The notes beneath the pieces are model-generated. The model ran no database searches, was not told the origin of the DNA, and was given only the letters and a program-made list of their open reading frames with translations. Shown in pieces: positions 5,118 through 64,000 of a stretch of DNA of 64,000 bases. Made by a program: the position numbers and the translations under genes. The stretch is from Isurus oxyrinchus (lineage: Eukaryota): NCBI GenBank assembly GCA_026770705.1, contig JANJGN010000131.1, forward strand, positions 744,001 through 808,000. Reading direction: 5' to 3'. Numbering within the stretch: position 1 is the stretch's first letter; the number at the start of each line of letters is the position of its first letter.

Positions 5118-5180
5118 GTAATTAATGCCAGCCAGTGTATTGTTTAATTGAATCACCAGGACTCTCCTCCGCCTATATCT
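5118..5180 (+). promoter_or_regulatory. Putative proximal promoter of GPCR gene 1
   Basis: GTAATTAATG (5118), TAATTG (5145), degenerate O/E-like aatcaccaggac, 11 nt, then TATATC (5174). Same spacing as the promoter of gene 2. Confidence 0.45.
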
Positions 5181-5270: not shown

Positions 5271-5367
5271 ATGTTCTTTGAAATTCCAACTGAACTTCGG
5301 ATTGTCTGGGTGATTTATGATTTGCAAAGGATTTACTATCCGCTCCTCGCTGCTGTTGGCATTTCTG
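5271..5367 (+). CDS. GPR139-like: GPR139/GPR142-like orphan GPCR gene 1, exon 1 (joins 10629..11530; 332 aa)
   Basis: ATG at 5271 gives MFFEIPTELRIVWVIYDLQRIYYPLLAAVGIS, then G|GTGAGT donor at 5368 (phase 1). The IYYP..AAxG TM1 motif is shared with the paralogs. Confidence 0.85.
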
Positions 5368-9890: not shown

Positions 9891-10628
9891 TAACAACTTC
9901 ATTTCCCAACCACTGGCCCATTTAATTCCTGGCCCAAAACACAGACATTAGATCCATTGGTAAATTCTCTCCTGCTAGCCAGCCTGAATTTTGGGTGCTG
10001 CCACTCTCTGCTGTTCCTTCGTGTTGGCCAGCTCTGATTCAATCTCTAATTTATTTTCTTCAGTCTAGCGATCCATTTACCTCCCTGTTCTTTATTTCTT
10101 TTCGAGAGTCTATTTGTTACTGGGATACAGTCTAAGCGTTCATTGTGCCTTTTGGCGAAGGCAATAATTATCAGGAAGGCACATTTGGACATCCTGATTT
10201 GAAATACAATTTCTGAATTCAAATCTGTATTTACTTCTTTACACAACCTTAATGTTCCACTCAAATGTCTTCTCAAAAATAAATGAACCATTTTCCTTCA
10301 GTACAAATCACAGCCCTTCTTACATATCGTTGTGATGCAGTTTGCAGCATGTTCATGGGATATTGAGCAGGACTAATAATGGAGTGAGTGATTTTCACTC
10401 CGAATTCCATGAATAATTTAGGGAAGTGGCGATGAGACCTGCTGCAGGATTTGGTTTCCTGCTACAACAGGATGGTGTTTAACTCGAAACACTCCCTCCA
10501 GCGTAAAGCTCAAACACTGGTAAAGTAATTAGATTCTGACCTTGGATAACTCGGTTCAAATGTCACTCCATCAGTCTGTAACATTTGCTCTAAGTTAAAT
10601 AACTATCCTGCCTTTCTCTTCCTTACAG

Positions 10629-11530
10629 TGAACATACTGACTATTGTGACACTGTCTCGGGGAAGGTGCGGTCTCTCAAAATGTGTTTCCCTTTACCTGG
10701 TGTCCATGGCAACCGCGGATCTACTGGTCGTTATCCTTGATCTCATATTCAGGCAAATTGCTATTCTTTACTGGGCTCAGTTTCAGTTCATGTGGAGGTT
10801 TAAAGTGTGTAATATCCATGCAGTCCTGCTTTATGCAGCCACAGATTGTTCTGTCTGGTTCACAGTCTCTTTCACCTTTGATAGATTTCTGGCTATTTGT
10901 TCCCAGAAGTTGAAAACAAAATATTGCACCCAGCATACGGCGGCTGTGGTTCTCGGAACAGTCAGTCTGCTATTCTGTGTGAAGGATTCATTCTGGTACT
11001 TTATGTATGTAGGTCATTATTCGCTTTCCAATGCTCCTTGGTTTTGCACATTAGTGACGGATGCTGAATTCTCATCAATGTGGGCAGCAATCGAATGTCT
11101 TCATTATATTTTAACACCATTTGTGCCATTTGTTTTGATTTTGATGTTGAACGCTTTAACTGTCAGATATATTTTAGTGTCGAGCAGAGCCCGCAGGAGA
11201 CTCCGGGCTCACTGCAGTGGGGAGAGACCCAGGGACCCACAGATGGAGAAACGCAGGAAATCCATCATTTTACTGTTTGCTATATCGGGGAATTTTATCC
11301 TGTTGTGGTTAGTTTTTATGATAAATTCTGTTTGTAATAGGCTATATGTGTTAGATGCTATTCCTGTATACCTTCCTAGGTTTGTGCAGGAACTGGGATT
11401 TATATTTCAGCTCCTGAGTTGTTGCACTAACACGGCCATTTATGCAGTGACCCAGACTCAATTCAGAAATGAGCTGAAGAATGTGGTGAAATATCCCTTT
11501 TCTGTAATTTTTAAATGTATTAAACAGTGA
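10629..11530 (+). CDS. GPR139-like: GPR139/GPR142-like orphan GPCR gene 1, exon 2
   Basis: Pyrimidine tract and ccttacAG| at 10628. Uninterrupted 7TM ORF with NILTIV (TM1), MATADLL (TM2), C3.25, FTFDRF (TM3), PWFC (ECL2), RRKSIILLF (TM6), NTAIY (TM7), FRNEL (helix 8), stop TGA at 11528-11530. Confidence 0.93.
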
Positions 11531-15200: not shown

Positions 15201-15559
15201 TTTATTAGTAATATCAGAGAATATTTCACAGGAAATTTTATTTTAAAGTTAACAGAAGTGAATATAATGCCTGAGGTCACGTTGGGAACAGAACACATGC
15301 GCTCTGATTTGGTAAATTGTATGTACCACTGGAACATAGATCAGAAAGAGAAAACTGAGGCTCAAAGGAAAGGGAAGGGGGTAATAACGAATAACGAATG
15401 AAAACGTTACTTAATTACAATTCAAATCCTAACTCCAGGGAAATTAGATGCTACAATTACATTACAACCATTTTCATCTCACACCTTTCATACATGAAAT
15501 CGGAAATACTGCTACAGGTTCGGTTACAGATTCGGGATCACAAAGTGAAGACATTTCAC
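15201..15559 (-). pseudogene. Immunoglobulin heavy-chain TM2 exon and 3'UTR (orphan remnant)
   Basis: ctaaAG|GTG AAA (VK) at 15559, 241 nt after the TM1 donor. Reads VKCLHFVIPNL* (stop ends at 15524). AATAAA on the minus strand at 15201-15206. Confidence 0.65.
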
Positions 15560-26750: not shown

Positions 26751-27721
26751 ATTTTTCTGCTACTTAATCGTTTAGACAAATCCCTTATAAAGTGCAGAGC
26801 AATCGGTTTGTTTCAATTAACATCGGAAGACATAACAAATGATAATATGTACACAGCATGAATGTCTTGGATTGGATTTTCTGCTGAGATCAATGCTGAG
26901 TCCTAAGACTTTCGGTTGGTTGTAAGTCACGACACGGGAAATTCCAAATAACAGCAAGTGTGTAATATTTAATCCACGATTGGGATAGGGGGTCATTGTG
27001 AAGCGTAACCCACAATTGCATTCTAATTACTGTTTCTGTATCAGGATGGCAATAAACTTTTATAATGCATTGTGGATGGTGAAGATAATGTTTCCATTAA
27101 ATTTGTTTTCTTTTTGTTCTGGCCAGTTGCGATTTGTAATCATTTAAAAGGGGAGATTGTTGCCAGTGTAACTTATATTGTATGATGACTCTGCGGATTT
27201 CGCCTCCATTGCCAAATGGAAGAGGCGAACAAAATGTTTCCTTTATCTGTGTCTGTAATATTCCAGTTCCCTCTTGCTATGTTTATGGGAAAAAGAGTTC
27301 AAGTGTGAAGCGGAGACTGCTCAATATAGATCAATGGGTGGGGACAGTGTCCGTTTCCATTTCAGGGCGCCATCTACCATCAAGTTCCAAAACATAGGAA
27401 GGGGAGGTAGCAAGGTTCCTACATTTAATAGTGAAACTTTGTTGCCAAGTTATACATTTTTGTCGGACACTTTGTCTCCTACATGAACGTCGAGACACCC
27501 CGGGACCTTAGGGACAGTTGGGAATGTACCAGGCCCGCTCTGGAAAGGGGACAAAAAATAAAAACAAACTGGGAAAATGCAGAGTTAGTTATATAATTCT
27601 GAATTCACACCTCGGACAGGAGGTAACTCTGTTTCTGCGGGTTGAAGCCATATGTAACATGTACAGCAACAGCAATGGGTGGGGTATAATGTAGAATTCA
27701 TGTTGGATTTCACTGCTTTCA

Positions 27722-28629
27722 TCATTTAAAAAAATTAACAATCAGACTCAATGGATATTTCACACCATTCTTTAACTCCTCTCTGAATTTACTCTGGGTA
27801 CCTGCATAAATAAAGGGGTTGATGCAGGAACTTAAAAGCTGCAGCATAAGTCCACATTCCTCCAGTATAACATTTGATTGATTGAAATTCGAGCCATCGA
27901 AATAACTAACGCTGGCAATTCGTGCGTAGAGGAAAGTTATAAGAGCGAGGAAATATAACAGGATGAAACTTCCCGAGATGGCAAAGAGTAAAACGATGGA
28001 CTTTCTCCTCTTCTCCATCTCTGGGTCACTTTGTTTCTCGCTCTTGCTGTGGGCTCGCAGTCTTCTGCGGGCTCGACTGGCCACAACAATGTGCCTGACC
28101 GTCAGAACATTGAGCAGCAAAATAAGAACGAATGGGAGACAAGGGGTTAAAACGGCATTTATGCTGTCATATGCCACCCATCCGGGTGATGAATAATATA
28201 TTGGCTTTAGTTTGCAGTACCAGGGTGTATTGTCCGTGATAACAGAAGGTTCACAAGCAAAGTACAAGGGTATTCTTTTAGCACAATGCACAACGCAGAC
28301 AGTTCCTATGACCACAGCTGCTGATTTCTTGGTGCAATATTTGGTTTTCAGCTGCTGACAACAAATGGCTACAAATCGATCAAAGGTGAAAGCAACTGTC
28401 ACCCAGACAGAAGAATCCCTGACGCCATATATGAACACAAGACTGAGAGCAAAGGCCGGAGTGATGGAGAGGAAACTAAATGGGAAATATGTACCTACAA
28501 TCCGGTTTAACATCACAGCAAGGATCATGATCAGGAGATCCGTCACGGCCATGGACATCAGGTAGTATGTGATACATCCAGTGAGACCGCATCTTCTTCG
28601 GGACAGGATCACAATTACTGCCAAATTAG
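27722..28629 (-). CDS. GPR139-like: GPR139/GPR142-like orphan GPCR gene 2, exon 2
   Basis: ctctgtcacAG| acceptor at 28630. Open 7TM frame ANLAVIVILSRRRCGL...MAVTDLL...FTFDRF...RRKSIVLLF...NPFIYAGTQSKFREELK, stop TGA at 27722. Confidence 0.93.
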
Positions 28630-30020
28630 CTGTGACAGAGGAATATAACCAGTAAGTTTGCGGTGGGGACAAATGAATATAGAACAGAAAATGTTGAGAA
28701 ACTCACAAATACAGCATTGGTCATGAAAAGAGAGCAATGTTCCCATTTCAGTCCTATGACTTATATACTCCAGTGGAGAAAGAAAGACTCATTCCAAAAT
28801 GCAGCAAATTGTCAATACTGTGCTGATTTACAGGAGGAATGCGGGCTCAGTCCTATAGTGAATATTCAAATTGCTGCATTGTTACTCAGTTAAATGAAAA
28901 ACAATCAAGTATCCTCTTGCTTGTTGTTTAGAGAAGAACAGGCTAGGACATTGGAAAAAGAAAGGTACACAATGTTAAATCGACCTACGAATTTGACAGA
29001 AACTGGGTAGATGGCGTTGAATGGAATTAAATACAAAGTGTTACTCTTGTGGGCATAATCCAGCAAATGAGAACAGAAAGAATGGAAAAAAAAAACTCCT
29101 TTGGAAGGAAATAAAGGGTAACTAGAACTCCTGAGTTATGATGACGTGCAGCGAACACAACTGTCCTTCACAGCAGGGTGGAAATCCACACACAGTTTAA
29201 GGTTCAGTTGCTTTTAAATTGAAAGACGTCAAGCTTTAGAGTCAAAACGTCCTGGATTCAAGCCCAACTTCAGCTCCCTGAGAATTCCTCTCCGCCCAGG
29301 GTGCCAGGTTTCTGCTAAGGTAAGAAACCCTGGGCCAGTCATTTAATATTCTGCACAGATTTATCAGATAAATACTGTTCATATTCCAACGAAAGGTTAA
29401 AGGGAAAAGAATGAGATAGTGCATAATACAGATACAGTTCCTCTGTAATAATTCACCCACGGTGACAATGCCGTTGAAACAATAGAAAAACATTTCCTCA
29501 GTGGTAACAGCGTTATACATTAAGCTTTTTAAAAATACCAAGAATAAAATAAAAGAACATCTAAAACCTCGAACGGTGGCGGTAAACAGATGAAAGTGTC
29601 CAATTAAACTGACTAAATGTTACTAGCTCAGGGAAGATAGTGCATTGTTACTGCTGAACTATTATTCTTGTATTGGGGAGAAACTATGTTCAAGGGAAGA
29701 AATGGCACAGACAAACTTGAGCGACTCGACATGTGATGACGACTAATCATGTCAGTAAAAGAAAACAATTGTGTTGCTAAAATGGAGAATTAAATTAAGC
29801 ATTTCCCTTGAAGTGGAAAAAAGTCACATTGTCGAGGGTGATAAATTGGGACGATGTCGCCGTAATGTTGATAGATTGTCCTGTTTAATGGGAGAAAGAA
29901 TATCGTACCATGTAGAAGCAAAGCTCCTAAATACGAACAATGATTCACTAAAATGAAAGCAAACCAAAGAGAAGTGATTAAACAATGATTTCAATAGCAT
30001 AGCAAACCAAAATACTTAAC

Positions 30021-30090
30021 CTGGAATCCCGATCGCTGCAATGACAGGATAATATATGATGAAAATAAGACCTTTTGGCAATCCGTGCAT
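30021..30090 (-). CDS. GPR139-like: GPR139/GPR142-like orphan GPCR gene 2, exon 1 (joined protein 325 aa)
   Basis: ATG at 30090 gives MHGLPKGLIFIIYYPVIAAIGIP, then G|GTTAAGT donor. 70 nt, phase 1, same layout as genes 3 and 4. Confidence 0.9.
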
Positions 30091-30140
30091 TTCTGTCACC
30101 AGCTGCGAGTGTGTTCTGCACCACAACTAAAGACAGTCAC

Positions 30141-30237
30141 ATATATATCTCAAGCCAGCCTCCAGGGAGACAATTAGACGCTTTGATCTTTTGCAATAAT
30201 TACGCTAATTGAAACAAAGATGGTCGTGCTGCAGCTG
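30141..30237 (-). promoter_or_regulatory. Proximal promoter of gene 2 (E-box, TAAT sites, O/E-like site, TATA)
   Basis: On the minus strand: CAGCTG...cAATTAgcgTAATTAttg...cTAATTG-TCTCCCTGGAGG-11 nt-TATATA. Confidence 0.65.
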
Positions 30238-37774: not shown

Positions 37775-40700
37775 TTTATGAGTTCCCAGGCATTCTGTTT
37801 CTTGTGTTGACAGGATTATTGGCAATGATACGGATGCTGCATAATATAGTTTAATTGATACTTCAATATTGTAATTTACACCTCAATTTCTTCATTAAAC
37901 GGGTCATTTATTTTACATGCTTAGATGTTAATTTTACATTGATATCGATGTAAATTTAACTCACGATGGTTGCGGTGTGTACAAAGCTCATCTAATTTGT
38001 TGATGGATCATGCAAATACAGTTGAATTGACAGGGAGTGACAGCTGATTCGCAGGATTTGTATGCGGGCCTCAGCTTTTCACCGCATTTAGAAGGATCAA
38101 AATGAAGCAACAGTAAGTTTCGTATCCAAATTGCTGCAGAAAATAAGCCATGTGGTACAGTAAATAGTTTAGAGAAGAACAGGACATTGCGAAGGGTTGT
38201 TGTTGGATAACTGAATGAGCAAACTGTGGGAGAAGGAATACAATTTGTGGAAAGGTATTTTTCTCTGGTGCTTTAAGCTTAACCATTGCACGTCACCATA
38301 TTTTCTAATTAGCGTGAAACTATAAATGATAGTGGTAAGTATTTTCCATGTTTTTGTTCACCCGCCACATGTTTATTGGTGTTCGATTTGCATTGCGTAA
38401 CTTTAACATCAATCATTGCAGTCGATGAATTGTTATGAAGACCATTTTTAACTCTGTTGCTGCTGTTAACAACTGCATTCAATTCTCTTTAGAGTGCACT
38501 TTGTTTTCAAGGCTGTGAGATACCCTTCGGAGCTGGAAATAATTATATTCGTAGCCACTTTATTTAGCTCAACTAAATTTTGAAATCTCAGTGTTCATTC
38601 GGAAAGCCCTGGGTTTGTTCCCTACTTCCGAACTGGTGTCTGTAGCCCAGCTCCATGCCGCTGAGGAAGTCCAGCACTATCTACTCTGTGGTCCTTCCGA
38701 CGAGGCTGTAAACCGAGGTCTTTCTGCTTTATCAGTTGAAAACCCTCACTACTGCTGCGAGACCTAATCTCCCACTACAGCAGTCACTGAACTGAATAAA
38801 AGCCTTTGATGCGCTTTGTCTTGCTTCCACAGGGACAAAACCCAAGTTGAATCAATGGTGTTCGCTTAGATTTTCTTTTTCAACGTACATTGGTTCCTTC
38901 TGATACTTATTAGGATTTCGTTATTACCCATATCTTATTTCCTGTCATTCGATTGGTTTCTTTATTATAGTGATTTAAAGTTTCATAACGTTATTATTTA
39001 CTGTATTTATAAATGAATAAATGTATTGAGCTTTTATCTGTATTTTATGCCATTTTCAGGTGGTTGTCCTTTTGCCAATTTAATACGTTAGTGAAGATCA
39101 ATTCCTTCTCCTTCTAGATTACATAAAATGTACATGAATCGGAAAGTAACAGTTTTGTGTCATTTTGTATTCCGACTTCCACTTTATCTGAGACAATATA
39201 AATAAAAAATGGACCAGAATTAATGCATTGGTAAACTAATCAGTTCCAGCGTTGAATGAAGTATCGATGGCCCATGTGCCATACCATTCTCCCGCCAAAC
39301 GGACATTGTAGCTGGGAGATTCAGCACTAATTCTTCCCTTCTCTCTCATCTCTTTCTCTCTCTCTCTCTCTCTCTCGCTTGCAGCTAATTTTCTGACTAT
39401 CGTGATCCGTTCCCGAGGAAGATGTGGTCTTTCCAGATACGCAGTATCCATGGCGGTGACAGATCTCCATGTTATTATCATTACACTGGTATTAAGCCGG
39501 TGTTCGGCTGTTTATTTTCCAGTCAGTTTTCTGAGCCACTCAAAAGACGAGACAGAAACATTCTAAATCTGAATTCATTGTATTCTACGTATTTTTTTCC
39601 GGAATTAGGTCTTTTCAATCTTTGTTTAACTGTGAAGGCTTGAGGGTCAGATGTTTACTTTCTAGCTTCTACCGGATGTTTGGCTGCTCTCCAACAGTAA
39701 AAGATTCAAGATTGCTTAATGTGTTCCTGCGATTTCTGTGTCGTGTGTTGACGGACTTTTTGGCAATGATACAAATGCTGCACAATGTAGTTTAATTGTT
39801 ACTTCATTAATGTCATTATTTCTTGAATTTCTTAGTTAAACAGGTCGTTTATTGTACTTGCCTAGATGTTAATTTACAGTGATATCGATGTAAATTTAAG
39901 TCACGATGGCTGTGGTATATGCAATGTTCATCTAATTTGTTGATGGATACTGTGAATACATTTCAACTGACAGGGGGTGACAGCTGATTCGCACGATTTG
40001 TATTTGGGTCTCAGCTTTTCACCGCATTTAGGAGGTTAAAAAATGAGGCAACAGTAAGTTTCGTATCCAAATTGCTGCCGAAAATAAGCCATGTGGCACA
40101 GTAAATATTTTGGTTAAGAAGAGGACATTGCGAAGAGTTGTTGTTGGATAACTGAATGAGCAAACTGTGGGAGAAGAAATATAATTTATGGAAGGGTGTT
40201 TTTTGTGGCGCTTTGAGCTTAGCCATTAGGGATCAGCATATTTTCCAATTGGCGGGAAACCATAAATATTAGTGGTATGTATTTTTCTATATTTTTGTTT
40301 ACCCTCCACATGTTTATTCGTAAATTTATCAAATAGTTGCTATCGATGAACTGTTATGAAGACTTTTTTTTAACTCTGTTGCTGCTATTAACTGCTCCAT
40401 TCAATTCTCCTAAAATGTATTTTGTTGTCAAGGCTATGTGATACCCATCGGAGCCGGCATTTATTATGCTCATAGCCACTTTATTTCGGGGATCTAAATT
40501 TTGAAATATCAGCGTTCAAGCAATGGGTTTGAGCCCTACTCCCGATCTCGAGTTCCTAACCTAGCTGCATACTCCTGAGGAAGGACAGCACTATTTGCTC
40601 TGTCGCACTTTTAATCAGTGGAGGTCTTTCTGCTTCTTCAATTGAAAATCTTCACTAATAATGCGAGAACTAATCTCGCACTACAGCAATCATTGAGCTG

Positions 40701-41282: not shown

Positions 41283-41457
41283 GCCTTACAGCTAACTTTC
41301 TAATGATTGTGATCTTTTCCAGAGGAATATGTGGTCTCTCCTGATGTATCACGCAATATCTGGTATCCATGGTGGTGACAGATTTCCTTGTCATTAGCAT
41401 TAGCGTGACATTAAGCTCATTTCCAGCTGTTTATTTTCCAGTCAGTTTTCTGTCCAG
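37775..41457 (+). repeat. Tandem segmental duplication (~1.75-kb units at ~37775-39537 and ~39712-41457)
   Basis: Colinear matches throughout, e.g. tcagcttttcaccgcatttag at 38071 and 40011, aagtttcgtatccaaattgctgc, aatcagttccagcgttgaat. Each unit ends in a GPCR exon 2. Confidence 0.9.
39385..39537 (+). pseudogene. Truncated GPR139-like exon 2 fragment
   Basis: (CT)n-gcttgcAG| then ANFLTIVIRSRGRCGLSRYAVSMAVTDLHVIIITLVLSRCSAVYFPVSFLS, with an internal deletion and an abrupt break after ECL1. Confidence 0.85.
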
Positions 41458-42197
41458 CATTCCTCTATGTCGTCCTTGTTGCTTTAAACTTTGGCTCCAA
41501 ATGTTGTACTCTCTGGTCAACCTTCAAATTCACCTTTTACTGCTTCCTGGCCATTTGTCACCAGGAGCTGGAAATGGAATACTGCAGTTAGAAAACAGCA
41601 ACTGGAAATTTAGGAATGATCTGTGTGCTGTCCACTTTGATAAACACCCTTTTTATTTCATAAATGAACCTATTTATATCGTTAACAATGTAACTCGGTG
41701 CTCTCTCATAGATGATGCATTTTATATTTCATTTCCATGGAGAATATTTGAATGGCTGGACTGTATTCTAACTCCATGTCTCTCCTTTCTCCTGATTTTG
41801 CTGCTCGATATTGAGACTTTCTGAAATATTCTACTGGCAAGTAGATCCTGCAGCAGACTCTGATCCCAAAGGAATGGAGAGAATCAGAGTGTCTCCGAGA
41901 TGAAGAGCCACAGCAAGTCTATTGTTGTACTCTTCTCCATCTCAGGCAGTTTCCTCCAGCTGGTCTTAACGCATATTGTACGTTTCCTGTTTGCACAAAG
42001 TATGGGAAATAGCTGATCTATCAGTTCCATTTCCATTGACACAAAATATATTCTGCAGCAAAGCTGATAGTTTTTTAACTCCTTAGACCCTGTAGCAATA
42101 CATTTATATATGCAGGGACCCAGACGAAATACAAAGCGGAGCTGAAAAGGGCGTTTAAATACTCTTTCAATCTATTGCCAAATGGCACAAACTGTGA
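41292..42197 (+). pseudogene. GPR139-like pseudogene, full-length decayed exon 2
   Basis: ccttacAG| then ANFLMIVIFSRGICGLS*CITQYLVSMVVTDFL, with in-frame TGA at 41342, frameshifts and later stops. Recognisable ILTPCLSFLLILLL, KSIVVLFSISGSF and IYAGTQTKYKAELK. Confidence 0.9.
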
Positions 42198-45377: not shown

Positions 45378-45466
45378 CAGCTGCACTAAAATGTTTTTTT
45401 TCAGTTGGTGTAATTAATGTAAAAGGCCTTCTCATTGTCTCCCTAGAGGCCGACATCATGTATAAA
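45378..45466 (+). promoter_or_regulatory. Proximal promoter of gene 3 (E-box, TAAT site, O/E-like site, TATA)
   Basis: CAGCTG (45378), TAATTA (45411), TCATTG-TCTCCCTAGAGG (45432-45449), 11 nt, TATAAA (45461). Confidence 0.65.
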
Positions 45467-45517
45467 TGTAACAGTCTTTCGGTGTAGCACAGAGCACCCT
45501 CGGAGCTTATGAGAGAA

Positions 45518-45587
45518 ATGCATGGGATACCACAAGGTCTGGTGTTCGCCATTTACTATCCCGTTCTTGCAGCTATCGGTATTCCAG
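45518..45587 (+). CDS. GPR139-like: GPR139/GPR142-like orphan GPCR gene 3, exon 1 (joined protein 326 aa; alternative in-frame ATG at 45509)
   Basis: MHGIPQGLVFAIYYPVLAAIGIP, then G|GTAAAG donor at 45588. 70 nt, phase 1. Confidence 0.9.
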
Positions 45588-60780: not shown

Positions 60781-61690
60781 TTATCGTCCAAATAATTTAA
60801 CAATTTCAAGTAGTGGATATTTCACCCCATTCTTTAACACCTCTCTGAATTTACTCTGGTCCCTGCATAAATAAACAGGTTTGCGCAGGAACTCAAAAAC
60901 TGAAGCATGTATGCTTTTTCCTCAAGAATGAATGTTGAAAGATTGATTTCAGAGCTTGAAAAGTATTTAACATTTCCAATTTGCACATAGAGGAAAGTTA
61001 TAAAAATTAACAAGTATAACAGGATGAAATTTCCCGATACACAGAAGAGTAAAATGATGGACTTTTTCCGCTTCTCCATCTCAGGGTCACGCTGATTGTC
61101 TCCATTTCTCCGGGTCTGGAGTCTCCTGCGAGCTCTGCTGGCTGCGAGAATGTGTCTAACTGTCAGGACATTGAGCAGTAAAATCAGAATGAATGGGAGA
61201 CAAGGGGTTAAAATGTGATCAATGCAGTCATAGGCGATCCATGCAAGTGAGGTATAAAATATCACTTTTACATCGCAGAACCAGGGCACATTGTCAATTA
61301 TGTACAAAGATTCGTATATAAAATACTGGAAGGTGTTTTTGACACAGCTGATTGTGCAGATTGTCCCTATAACCCGTGCCGCCGTTTTTTTGGAACAACA
61401 TTTTACTTTCAGCTTCTGGCAACAAATGGCCACAAATCGATCAAAGGTGAAAGCTGTAGTTAACCAGGCAGAGCTGTCTATGGCTGAATATATTAAGGCT
61501 TCACGGAGACTGCATACTGGTGTGATTGACAGGAAACTGAGTGGGAAATAAATACCAGCAGTCCGGTTCAATATCACAGCGGTTATAATGAGCAGGAGAT
61601 CTGATACCGCCAGGGATTGTAAATAATGCGTTATACAGGTGGAGAGGCCGCATTTCACTCGAGAAAGGATCACAATCACCGCCAGGTTAG
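60781..61690 (-). CDS. GPR139-like: GPR139/GPR142-like orphan GPCR gene 4, exon 2 (1-bp frameshift after TM7; as sequenced stops at 60834)
   Basis: (CT)n-tttattgcAG| at 61691. Open through all 7 TMs. GGG ACC AG AGT lacks one C of ACC CAG at ~60858. The ancestral tail SKFREVLKNGVKYPLLEIVKLFGR* continues in the other frame to TAA at 60781. Confidence 0.85.
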
Positions 61691-63846: not shown

Positions 63847-63916
63847 CTGGAACCCCGAGAGCTGCAAGGACTGGATAATAAATGGCAGACAGAAGGTCTT
63901 TTGGTGATCCGTGCAT
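63847..63916 (-). CDS. GPR139-like: GPR139/GPR142-like orphan GPCR gene 4, exon 1
   Basis: ATG at 63916 gives MHGSPKDLLSAIYYPVLAALGVP, then G|GTAAAG. 70 nt, phase 1. Confidence 0.9.
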
Positions 63917-63967
63917 CTCCAACAAATGTTCTGAACGCCTTCTGCACTGCACTGAAAGATTGTCACA

Positions 63968-64000
63968 TTTATAACTGATATGAAGCTCCAGGGAGTTAAT
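63968..64000 (-). promoter_or_regulatory. Proximal promoter of gene 4 (cut by window edge)
   Basis: On the minus strand: ATTA-ACTCCCTGGAGC-11 nt-TATAAA, then tgtgac as in gene 2. Confidence 0.65.

What the first reader, a model, noticed from the sequence alone, without database searches (positions are those of the whole stretch)
30141..30237. Olfactory-receptor-type promoter module (homeodomain + O/E + TATA, fixed spacing) shared by all four orphan GPCR genes
Seen: gene 2 has TAATTG-TCTCCCTGGAGG-N11-TATATA, gene 3 TCATTG-TCTCCCTAGAGG-N11-TATAAA (45432-45466), gene 4 ATTA-ACTCCCTGGAGC-N11-TATAAA (63968-64000). The much more divergent gene 1 has TAATTG-aatcaccaggac-N11-TATATC (5145-5179). Genes 1-3 also have an upstream GTAATTA, 26 nt before the second TAAT site in genes 1 and 2. 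Genes 2 and 3 share a CAGCTG E-box about 30 nt further up. Known: adjacent homeodomain (Lhx2, TAATNN) and O/E (Olf1/EBF, TCCCNNGRG) sites are the hallmark of vertebrate olfactory-receptor promoters and enhancers. Inference: these receptors are transcribed in olfactory sensory neurons by the OR-type programme. Alternative: EBF1 plus an E-box (E2A) is also the B-cell combination, which matters because IgH remnants are interleaved here.
Basis: partly seen in the sequence, partly recalled or inferred. Interest (0 to 1): 0.85.

Follow-up and report, generated by a model that had tools for sequence, protein, structure and literature searches.

The report
Shared promoter of shark GPCR paralogs
Neighbouring copies of a receptor gene family that is greatly expanded in sharks share a short TATA-type promoter with homeodomain-type sites, but nothing here shows that it is a smell-receptor promoter.

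Summary
Genes 2, 3 and 4 carry TCCCTRGAG, 11 spacer bases and TATAWA. The TATA lies exactly 57 nt before the ATG in all three, and a conserved CAGA lies 30 nt after it.

The genes are two-exon "GPR139-like" class-A GPCRs, a family with 2167 hits, the best all from elasmobranchs.

The divergent gene 1 keeps GTAATTA-N20-TAATTG-N23-TATA in exact register with gene 2 (expected 5e-5 per window), but lacks the TCCC core. So the homeodomain-type sites and the TATA box are the deeply conserved parts.

The O/E label is weak:
- It matches 11-12 of 17 specified positions of the published consensus. About 0.4-1.7% of window positions score as well.
- With three paralogs it is not shown to be more conserved than its flanks (permutation 0.37).

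No RNA evidence was obtained. The literature leans against an OR-type programme in the shark nose.

This scan had already noted the same module on other DNA of this genome, and two follow-ups reached the same conclusion.

Verdict: a real conserved proximal promoter. Expression tissue is unknown and the olfactory reading is untested.

The parts
30232..30237 (-). Gene 2 E-box CAGCTG. It is the upstream edge of the block conserved with gene 3.
   Evidence: The blastn block between genes 2 and 3 starts at 30237.
30197..30203 (-). Gene 2 distal homeodomain-type site GTAATTA. A further CAATTA lies at 30211-30206.
   Evidence: GTAATTA is the only 7-mer shared by the 200-bp upstream regions of genes 1, 2 and 3.
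30171..30176 (-). Gene 2 proximal homeodomain-type site TAATTG.
30159..30170 (-). Gene 2 O/E-like 12-mer TCTCCCTGGAGG.
   Evidence: It matches 12 of 17 specified consensus positions.
30142..30147 (-). Gene 2 TATA box TATATA, 57 nt before the ATG.
30021..30117 (-). Gene 2 exon 1. The predicted start is the A of the conserved CAGA at 30117. ATG is at 30090 and the donor GT follows 30021.
   Evidence: The start site is inferred, not mapped.
27722..28632 (-). Gene 2 exon 2 (7tm_1), with the acceptor ...cacag|CT.
45378..45383 (+). Gene 3 E-box CAGCTG.
45410..45416 (+). Gene 3 distal homeodomain-type site GTAATTA.
45432..45449 (+). Gene 3 TCATTG (TAAT core lost) followed by the O/E-like TCTCCCTAGAGG.
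   Evidence: 11 of 17 positions
45461..45466 (+). Gene 3 TATA box TATAAA, 57 nt before the ATG at 45518.
45491..45587 (+). Gene 3 exon 1. The predicted start is at 45491 and the ATG at 45518.
63985..64000 (-). Gene 4 ATTA (cut by the window end) followed by the O/E-like ACTCCCTGGAGC.
   Evidence: 12 of 17 positions
63968..63973 (-). Gene 4 TATA box TATAAA, 57 nt before the ATG at 63916.
63847..63943 (-). Gene 4 exon 1. The predicted start is at 63943.
5118..5179 (+). Gene 1 module: GTAATTA, 20 nt, TAATTG, AATCACCAGGAC (no TCCC core), 11 nt, TATATC. It is in exact register with gene 2. The ATG is at 5271.

Best explanation
The finding is the proximal promoter of a tandem cluster of two-exon, GPR139-like class-A GPCR genes. 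It was inherited through gene duplication and has been kept largely intact.

Reading from the ATG upstream, its parts are:
- A 27-nt 5' UTR.
- A conserved CA(+1)GA initiator-like element.
- A TATA box whose first T lies 30 nt upstream of that A.
- An 11-nt variable spacer.
- A pyrimidine-then-purine 12-mer (TCTCCCTRGAGG) that matches the core of the O/E (EBF) consensus.
- A TAATTG homeodomain-type site abutting the 12-mer.
- A second homeodomain-type site (GTAATTA) 22-27 nt further up.
- In genes 2 and 3, an E-box.

Most likely mechanism (inferred):
- TBP/TFIID is positioned by the TATA and initiator pair and gives a focused start site.
- One or more homeodomain factors bound at the TAAT sites supply cell-type restriction.
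- In the gene 2-4 subfamily, a factor bound to the 12-mer may contribute as well.

What is shown and what is inferred:
- Shown here: the sequence layout, its register, and its conservation relative to the upstream DNA and the intron.
- Inferred: the start site, the identity of the binding factors, and the tissue.
For: Gene models:
- The exon-1 peptides (MHGLPKGL..IGIP) match the annotated N-termini of homologues in other sharks.
- Donors and acceptors are intact in all four genes.

Layout in genes 2-4:
- The alignment of the three genes from -84 to +68 needs no gaps.
- TATA to ATG is 57 nt in 3 of 3 genes.
- The A of the conserved CAGA lies 30 nt after the first T of the TATA in 3 of 3 genes.

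Gene 2 against gene 3, scored against shuffles:
- -150..-1: z = 24.9, 106 of 145 identical.
- -300..-151: z = 4.1.
- Further upstream: z <= 1.3.
- First 150 nt of the intron: z = 0.9.
- Best intron stretch: 257 of 413 identical (62%).

Gene 1 against gene 2:
- The upstream regions show no general similarity (local score 17 against a shuffle mean of 18.5).
- Yet GTAATTA-N20-TAATTG-N23-TATA occurs only at 5118 and 30203, with 5e-5 expected per window.
- Gene 1 matches 18 of 18 motif columns. The next best among about 128,000 positions is 14.
- GTAATTA is the only 7-mer shared by the three 200-bp upstream regions. 18 of 500 shuffles gave a shared 7-mer.

There is no CpG island: CpG observed/expected is 0.43-0.60 and GC is 0.40-0.42. 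This fits a tissue-restricted TATA promoter.
Against: - No start site or transcript was mapped. No RNA holder was found, and the two runs guessed to be RNA gave zero depth over exon 1 and the promoter.
- Three-way identity of the 84 noncoding bases (45 of 84, 54%) equals that of 4-fold degenerate sites in exon 2 (32 of 60, 53%). A 10-nt window with at least 9 identical columns arises in 37% of column shuffles. With three paralogs, constraint on individual motifs is therefore not demonstrated.
- The Fisher contrast of motif against spacer (14 of 16 against 2 of 11, p = 0.0009) is post hoc, because the motifs were picked for being conserved.
- Gene 4 looks like a pseudogene (frameshift in the C-terminal tail, NPxxY changed to NLFIY) yet still carries the module.
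- Gene conversion among paralogs could also keep the promoter and exon 1 alike.
- An unannotated upstream noncoding exon cannot be excluded.
Confidence: 0.7

Rival explanations
1. The module is an olfactory-receptor-type promoter bound by Lhx2 and O/E (Ebf), and these receptors are chosen and transcribed in olfactory sensory neurons, making the family an unrecognised shark chemoreceptor family.
For: - The core TCCCyngrg of the published O/E consensus is matched exactly in genes 2-4, and homeodomain sites and a TATA box lie beside it.
- O/E and homeodomain sites near the TSS typify mouse OR promoters (PMC3247239), and V1R promoters also carry O/E-like sites (PMC3247230, passages).
- The family is very large, arrayed in tandem and includes pseudogenes, as chemoreceptor families do.
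- In gene 1's 12-mer the pyrimidine-then-purine pattern is kept at 8 of 9 central positions (my reading of the output). Monahan et al. say composite Ebf sites tolerate such patterns.
Against: - There is no expression evidence at all.
- Against the full 22-nt consensus the sites score 11-12 of 17. 546 window positions score at least 12, about 1.3 expected per 150-bp promoter on both strands.
- The loose core occurs at the chance rate in the window, 12 hits against 10.96 expected.
- Gene 1 lacks the TCCC core, and gene 3 lacks the proximal TAAT.
- In catshark, canonical ORs are not expressed in the nose and all its neurons carry microvillous markers (PMC10116579, abstract). [quoted passage not shown]
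- TAAT sites are bound by many homeodomain factors (general knowledge).
Confidence: 0.2
2. There is no selective constraint. The shared module is residual similarity from fairly recent tandem duplication, perhaps helped by gene conversion, and the transcription-factor-like words in it are coincidental.
For: - Noncoding three-way identity (54%) equals that of 4-fold sites (53%), and the permutation test gives p = 0.37.
- Parts of the intron still align between genes 2 and 3, 62% over 413 nt.
- The apparent pseudogene, gene 4, keeps the module.
Against: - The conserved block has sharp edges at about -150 and at the exon-1 donor, while the adjacent upstream DNA and the first 150 nt of the intron are unalignable.
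- Three genes show no indel in the 84 nt before the ATG.
- The old paralog gene 1, only 49% identical in exon-2 protein, keeps the two homeodomain-type sites and the TATA in register although nothing else in its upstream region aligns.
Confidence: 0.12
3. The module is a lymphoid (B-lineage) promoter. EBF1 binds the 12-mer and E2A binds the CAGCTG E-box, in keeping with the immunoglobulin and T-cell-receptor gene remnants around the cluster.
For: - Genes 2 and 3 carry a CAGCTG E-box 32-34 nt upstream of GTAATTA.
- Earlier first-reader notes place IgH remnants inside the window and a TCR V array beside it. I did not check these.
Against: - The E-box is absent from gene 1 and cannot be seen for gene 4.
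- The O/E match is weak.
- The most deeply conserved elements are homeodomain-type sites, which are not part of the classical EBF/E2A pairing (general knowledge).
- There is no expression data.
Confidence: 0.06

Closest known systems
Mouse odorant-receptor proximal promoters (O/E plus homeodomain sites, TATA in a subset)
   Same: - An O/E-core word, TAAT-type sites and a TATA box all lie within about 120 nt of the predicted start.
- There is no CpG island.
- The genes belong to a large tandem GPCR family.
Sources; PMC3247239.
   Different: - The full-consensus O/E match is weak, and the deepest paralog lacks it.
- GC content equals the local average rather than being exceptionally AT-rich.
- The coding sequence is split, with a 23-codon first exon. 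OR coding regions are intronless (recalled).
- Olfactory expression, Lhx2/Ebf binding and singular choice are all untested.
Greek Island Lhx2/Ebf composite motif of OR enhancers (Monahan et al. 2017)
   Same: A homeodomain-type site abuts an Ebf-like pyrimidine/purine element at a fixed short distance: 2 nt from TAATTG to TCCC in gene 2.
   Different: - The published motif marks intergenic enhancers and is stated not to be juxtaposed in most OR promoters. Here the pair sits at about -59 to -42 of a TATA promoter.
- The published logo is a figure and its sequences are in supplements, so I could not compare the letters or the spacing.
GPR139 (human orphan/aromatic amino-acid receptor; solved structure 7VUG)
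   Same: It is the best solved-structure match to a profile of the shark family (E = 6e-13, 51.9 bits). NCBI also names most shark homologues 'probable GPR139'.
   Different: - The match is only marginally better than the prolactin-releasing peptide receptor (3e-11).
- A single-sequence search found nothing at 1e-5.
- The name reflects the nearest hit, not shown orthology.

Membership tests
OR-type proximal promoter | An O/E (Olf-1/EBF) site within about 200 bp upstream of the TSS | tested here: inconclusive
   - The core TCCCyngrg is exact in 3 of 4 genes and absent from gene 1.
- Against the 22-nt V$NOLF consensus the sites score 12, 11 and 12 of 17, and gene 1 scores 9. About 0.4% of window positions score at least 12.
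- The TSS is only predicted.
OR-type proximal promoter | Homeodomain (TAAT-core) sites near the TSS | tested here: met
   - GTAATTA is present in genes 1, 2 and 3.
- TAATTG is present in genes 1 and 2.
- Gene 3 has TCATTG instead.
- Gene 4 is cut by the window end.
Sources.
OR-type proximal promoter | Transcription in olfactory sensory neurons, sparse and singular | not testable with these tools
   - There is no RNA holder.
- Depth over exon 1 in the two runs guessed to be RNA is zero.
- Run and tissue names are coded.
OR-type proximal promoter | Occupancy by Lhx2 and Ebf | not testable with these tools
   This needs ChIP or EMSA.
OR-type proximal promoter | Exceptionally AT-rich sequence without a CpG island | tested here: inconclusive
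   There is no CpG island (CpG observed/expected 0.43-0.60). GC of 0.40-0.42 equals the window mean of 0.419, so the region is not exceptionally AT-rich.
Greek Island composite Lhx2/Ebf motif | Stereotyped spacing and letter pattern of the composite | not testable with these tools
   The logo is a figure and the sequences are in supplements, which are closed. Text searches for the letters found none.
Greek Island composite Lhx2/Ebf motif | Location in an intergenic enhancer | tested here: not met
   The pair lies 11 nt upstream of a TATA box and about 80 nt before the ATG.
TATA plus initiator focused core promoter | A TATA box about 30 nt upstream of a CA(+1) initiator (spacing recalled from general knowledge) | tested here: met
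   In 3 of 3 genes the first T of the TATA lies 30 nt before the A of a conserved CAGA. The start site itself is not mapped.
GPR139/GPR142 receptor group | Orthology or clear nearest-neighbour relation to GPR139 | tested here: inconclusive
   The profile hit to GPR139 is E = 6e-13, against 3e-11 for PrRPR. No tree was built.

The most novel reading that the evidence does not exclude
The GPR139-like expansion of elasmobranchs is an unrecognised chemosensory receptor family. Its members carry, inside their own promoters, a homeodomain/O-E composite of the kind that mammals use in OR enhancers. That would mean the Lhx2/Ebf receptor-choice grammar predates, or is independent of, the canonical OR family. 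It would also mean the shark nose, or another chemosensory epithelium, is not limited to V2Rs.
Probability: 0.15. Interest if true: 0.85.

Novelty: new member of a known kind. Interest (0 to 1): 0.4.

Why it matters
Sharks have very few canonical odorant receptors, yet they carry hundreds of these GPR139-like genes, and my searches found no paper on their function. A rigid promoter shared by the whole family is a practical handle on that question:
- It predicts the start sites.
- It gives a short element for reporter constructs.
- It names candidate regulators that can be tested.

If expression proved to be olfactory, or otherwise chemosensory, the picture of shark olfaction as purely V2R-based would change. 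If expression proved to be in brain, immune or endocrine cells, the family would instead be an unusual expansion of an internal receptor.

Tried and rejected
Approaches that led nowhere:
- **Metagenome pattern scan.** A scan of metagenome contigs for the module found 0 matches.
- **Metagenome protein scan.** A scan with alignment A2 gave 18 loci of only 24-33% identity. These are not shark DNA and I did not use them.
- **RNA evidence.** The look-up of sequencing runs listed no RNA holder.
- **Reads.** Read laying showed that X1 and X2 are DNA. They cover all 30 bins, intron included, and differ from the window at about 3% of positions. X7 and X8, guessed to be RNA, touch only exon-2 stretches at under 95% likeness. 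One loose end there continues into intron-like sequence, so there is no spliced transcript, no start site and no tissue information.
- **A mistaken pattern.** My first module pattern had the spacer one base too long and missed the real sites. I corrected this.
- **Supplements.** These were closed and I did not ask for them. Supplementary file 2 of PMC5608512 and the additional files of PMC3247239 may bear on the composite-motif and O/E comparisons. Supplementary datasets of PMC11979771 may hold tissue Z-scores for catshark family members.
- **Papers on the family.** I searched for papers on this shark GPCR family. Nothing in the listings I saw described it.

Considered and rejected:
- **A high-copy repeat.** The gene 2 module has no further copy in the window.
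- **Extra promoters in the window.** Only four exon-1 copies exist. The pseudogene at 41285-42183 has none.

Full report
**What is there**

The window holds four two-exon class-A GPCR genes and one pseudogene.
- Gene 1 is on the + strand, with its ATG at 5271 and exon 2 at 10628-11530.
- Gene 2 is on the - strand, with its ATG at 30090 and exon 2 at 28632-27722.
- Gene 3 is on the + strand, with its ATG at 45518 and exon 2 running to 47763.
- Gene 4 is on the - strand, with its ATG at 63916 and exon 2 running to about 60834.
- The pseudogene lies at 41285-42183 and has no detectable exon 1.

All four exon-2 ORFs match Pfam 7tm_1.

Exon 2 of gene 2 finds 2167 proteins at E <= 1e-3. The best 120 are all elasmobranch proteins, mostly named 'probable G-protein coupled receptor 139', with a top identity of 73%. 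A profile of the family hits solved GPR139 best (E = 6e-13), only a little ahead of the prolactin-releasing peptide receptor at 3e-11. The name is therefore a nearest-hit label.

The 23-codon exon-1 peptides match the annotated N-termini of the shark homologues, and the splice sites are intact. The DNA just upstream of exon 1 is therefore the expected place for the promoter.

**Checking the observation**

Genes 2, 3 and 4 align without a single gap from -84 to +68 relative to the ATG.
- The O/E-like 12-mer sits at -80..-69.
- An 11-nt spacer follows.
- The TATA hexamer sits at -57..-52 in all three.
- A conserved CAGA has its A exactly 30 nt after the first T of the TATA, at window positions 30117, 45491 and 63943.

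That spacing is the classical TATA-initiator distance (recalled knowledge). It predicts a 27-nt 5' UTR.

The regex TCCCNNGRG-N10-14-TATAWA has exactly three hits in the 64 kb, and they are these promoters.

The claim 'all four' needs trimming:
- Gene 1 has AATCACCAGGAC where the others have the TCCC-core 12-mer, and its TATATC is 97 nt from the ATG.
- Gene 3 has TCATTG instead of TAATTG, and its two homeodomain-type sites are 5 nt closer together.
- Gene 4's upstream part is cut by the window end.

**Is it more than shared descent?**

The results point both ways, and I report both.

For constraint, comparing gene 2 with gene 3 against shuffles:
- -150..-1: z = 24.9, 106 of 145 identical.
- -300..-151: z = 4.1.
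- Further upstream: z <= 1.3.
- First 150 nt of the intron: z = 0.9.
- Best intron stretch: 62% identity (257 of 413).

The conserved block therefore has sharp edges, at the E-box (30237) and just past the exon-1 donor.

The strongest evidence comes from gene 1, whose exon-2 protein is only 49% identical to gene 2.
- Its upstream region has no general similarity to that of gene 2. The local alignment score is 17, against a shuffle mean of 18.5.
- Yet GTAATTA-N20-TAATTG-N23-TATA occurs in the window only at 5118 and 30203. About 5e-5 occurrences are expected from base composition.
- On the 18 motif columns gene 1 scores 18 of 18. The next best of about 128,000 positions scores 14.
- An unbiased word count found GTAATTA to be the only 7-mer shared by the 200-bp upstream regions of genes 1, 2 and 3. 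18 of 500 shuffles gave any shared 7-mer.

Against constraint:
- Among genes 2-4, the three-way identity of the 84 noncoding bases is 45 of 84 (54%). That of 4-fold degenerate sites in exon 2 is 32 of 60 (53%).
- The O/E core is 9 of 10 identical and the spacer 2 of 11. But a 10-nt window with at least 9 identical columns turns up in 37% of column shuffles.
- The Fisher contrast of motifs against spacer (p = 0.0009) is post hoc.

Gene 4 also looks like a pseudogene, with a frameshift in the C-terminal tail and NPxxY changed to NLFIY, yet it keeps the module.

My reading is that the two homeodomain-type sites and the TATA box are under long-term constraint. Constraint on the O/E-like 12-mer is plausible within the gene 2-4 subfamily, but it is not demonstrated.

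**How good is the O/E label?**

- The published consensus used for mouse OR promoters is nncdabTCCCyngrgarbnkgn (PMC3247239, table passage).
- Genes 2-4 match the core TCCCyngrg exactly.
- Over the 17 specified positions they score only 12, 11 and 12. Gene 1 scores 9 in the same register.
- 546 window positions (0.43%) score at least 12, which is about 1.3 per 150-bp promoter on both strands.
- The loose core by itself occurs at the chance rate, 12 hits against 10.96 expected.
- The second half-site reads GAGG where the palindromic EBF site has GGGA (recalled).

The label 'O/E-like' is fair. 'O/E site' is not established.

**Comparison with the literature**

- In mouse, 246 of 314 OR promoters have a conserved O/E site within 200 bp of the TSS, 39% have a TATA call at -60..-10, and homeodomain matrices are enriched (PMC3247239, section 6 and table passages).
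- A 2025 review repeats these features (PMC12547500, passages).
- Mouse V1R promoters also have O/E-like sites near their TSSs (PMC3247230, passages).
- Tight, stereotyped juxtaposition of Lhx2 and Ebf sites is described as the signature of Greek Island enhancers. It is enriched there relative to OR promoters, in most of which the sites are 'not juxtaposed' (PMC5608512, passages).
- The shark layout, with TAATTG 2 nt from TCCC, therefore resembles the enhancer composite more than a typical OR promoter.
- In catshark, canonical ORs are not expressed in the olfactory epithelium, and microvillous markers label the whole neuronal population (PMC10116579, abstract).
- Ciliated olfactory neurons are absent in sharks, and the 50 top genes specific to 'brain & olfactory epithelium' include no GPCR (PMC11979771, passages).
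- These points lower the prior for an OR-type programme. They do not exclude it, because those studies targeted the known receptor families.
- Four searches brought up no paper that described this shark family, judging by the listings.

**Expression**

- The one run search listed four holders of gene 2, all from one study and of unrecorded kind, and no RNA holder.
- Laying X1 and X2 showed them to be DNA. All 30 bins are covered, intron included.
- The two runs guessed to be RNA had 16 contigs and 1 contig respectively. All were under 95% alike, all lay only on exon-2 stretches, and depth over exon 1 and the promoter was zero.
- So there is no start-site mapping and no tissue information.
No promoter from another shark could be examined.

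**Earlier notes of this scan**

The same module has been noted on at least ten other stretches of this genome. Two follow-ups concluded that the promoter is conserved but that nothing shows olfactory use. I treat these as leads only. My own tests on this window reach the same verdict.

This report adds the following:
- The exact register with the old paralog, gene 1.
- The TATA-initiator geometry.
- The chance-level score of the O/E match.
- The negative permutation result.

**Verdict**

This is a real, conserved, TATA-type proximal promoter of a shark-expanded GPCR family. The homeodomain-type sites are its most durable upstream elements. The olfactory-receptor reading is an untested analogy.

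Noticed in passing
window 60790-60960 (- strand): Gene 4 has an apparent 1-nt frameshift just after IYAGT, so the conserved tail QSKFRE..KNGVKYPL continues in another frame. Its NPxxY motif reads NLFIY. It is probably a recent pseudogene, or else an assembly error.
   Followed up: partly
window 41285-42183 (+) and 39384-39536 (+): There is a degraded fifth GPCR copy (37% identity to gene 2, broken into pieces) and a further 55-residue fragment. No exon 1 or promoter module was detected for either.
   Followed up: partly
window 27261-27721 (- strand, downstream of the gene 2 stop): The blastn block between genes 2 and 3 runs about 460 nt past the stop codon at 73% identity. The 3' UTR, or 3' flank, is therefore as conserved as the coding region.
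   Followed up: no
window 15433-15441 (- strand): The same 9-mer, TCCCTGGAG, occurs once more, inside the stretch that another first-reader note calls IgH membrane exons. It is probably coincidence, given 12 hits against 10.96 expected for the loose consensus.
   Followed up: no
window 30100-30105: Gene 2 has a second CAGCTG inside the predicted 5' UTR, 10-15 nt before the ATG. It is not conserved in genes 3 or 4.
   Followed up: no
window 27735-28483, runs X1 and X2: At 80% likeness, the summed contig depth on some exon-2 bins is 30-60 times that of the intron and promoter bins. This fits very many paralogs sharing conserved exon-2 stretches, although depth here is not a copy number. The window also differs at about 3% of positions from the contigs of these DNA runs, which carry the same species label.
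   Followed up: no
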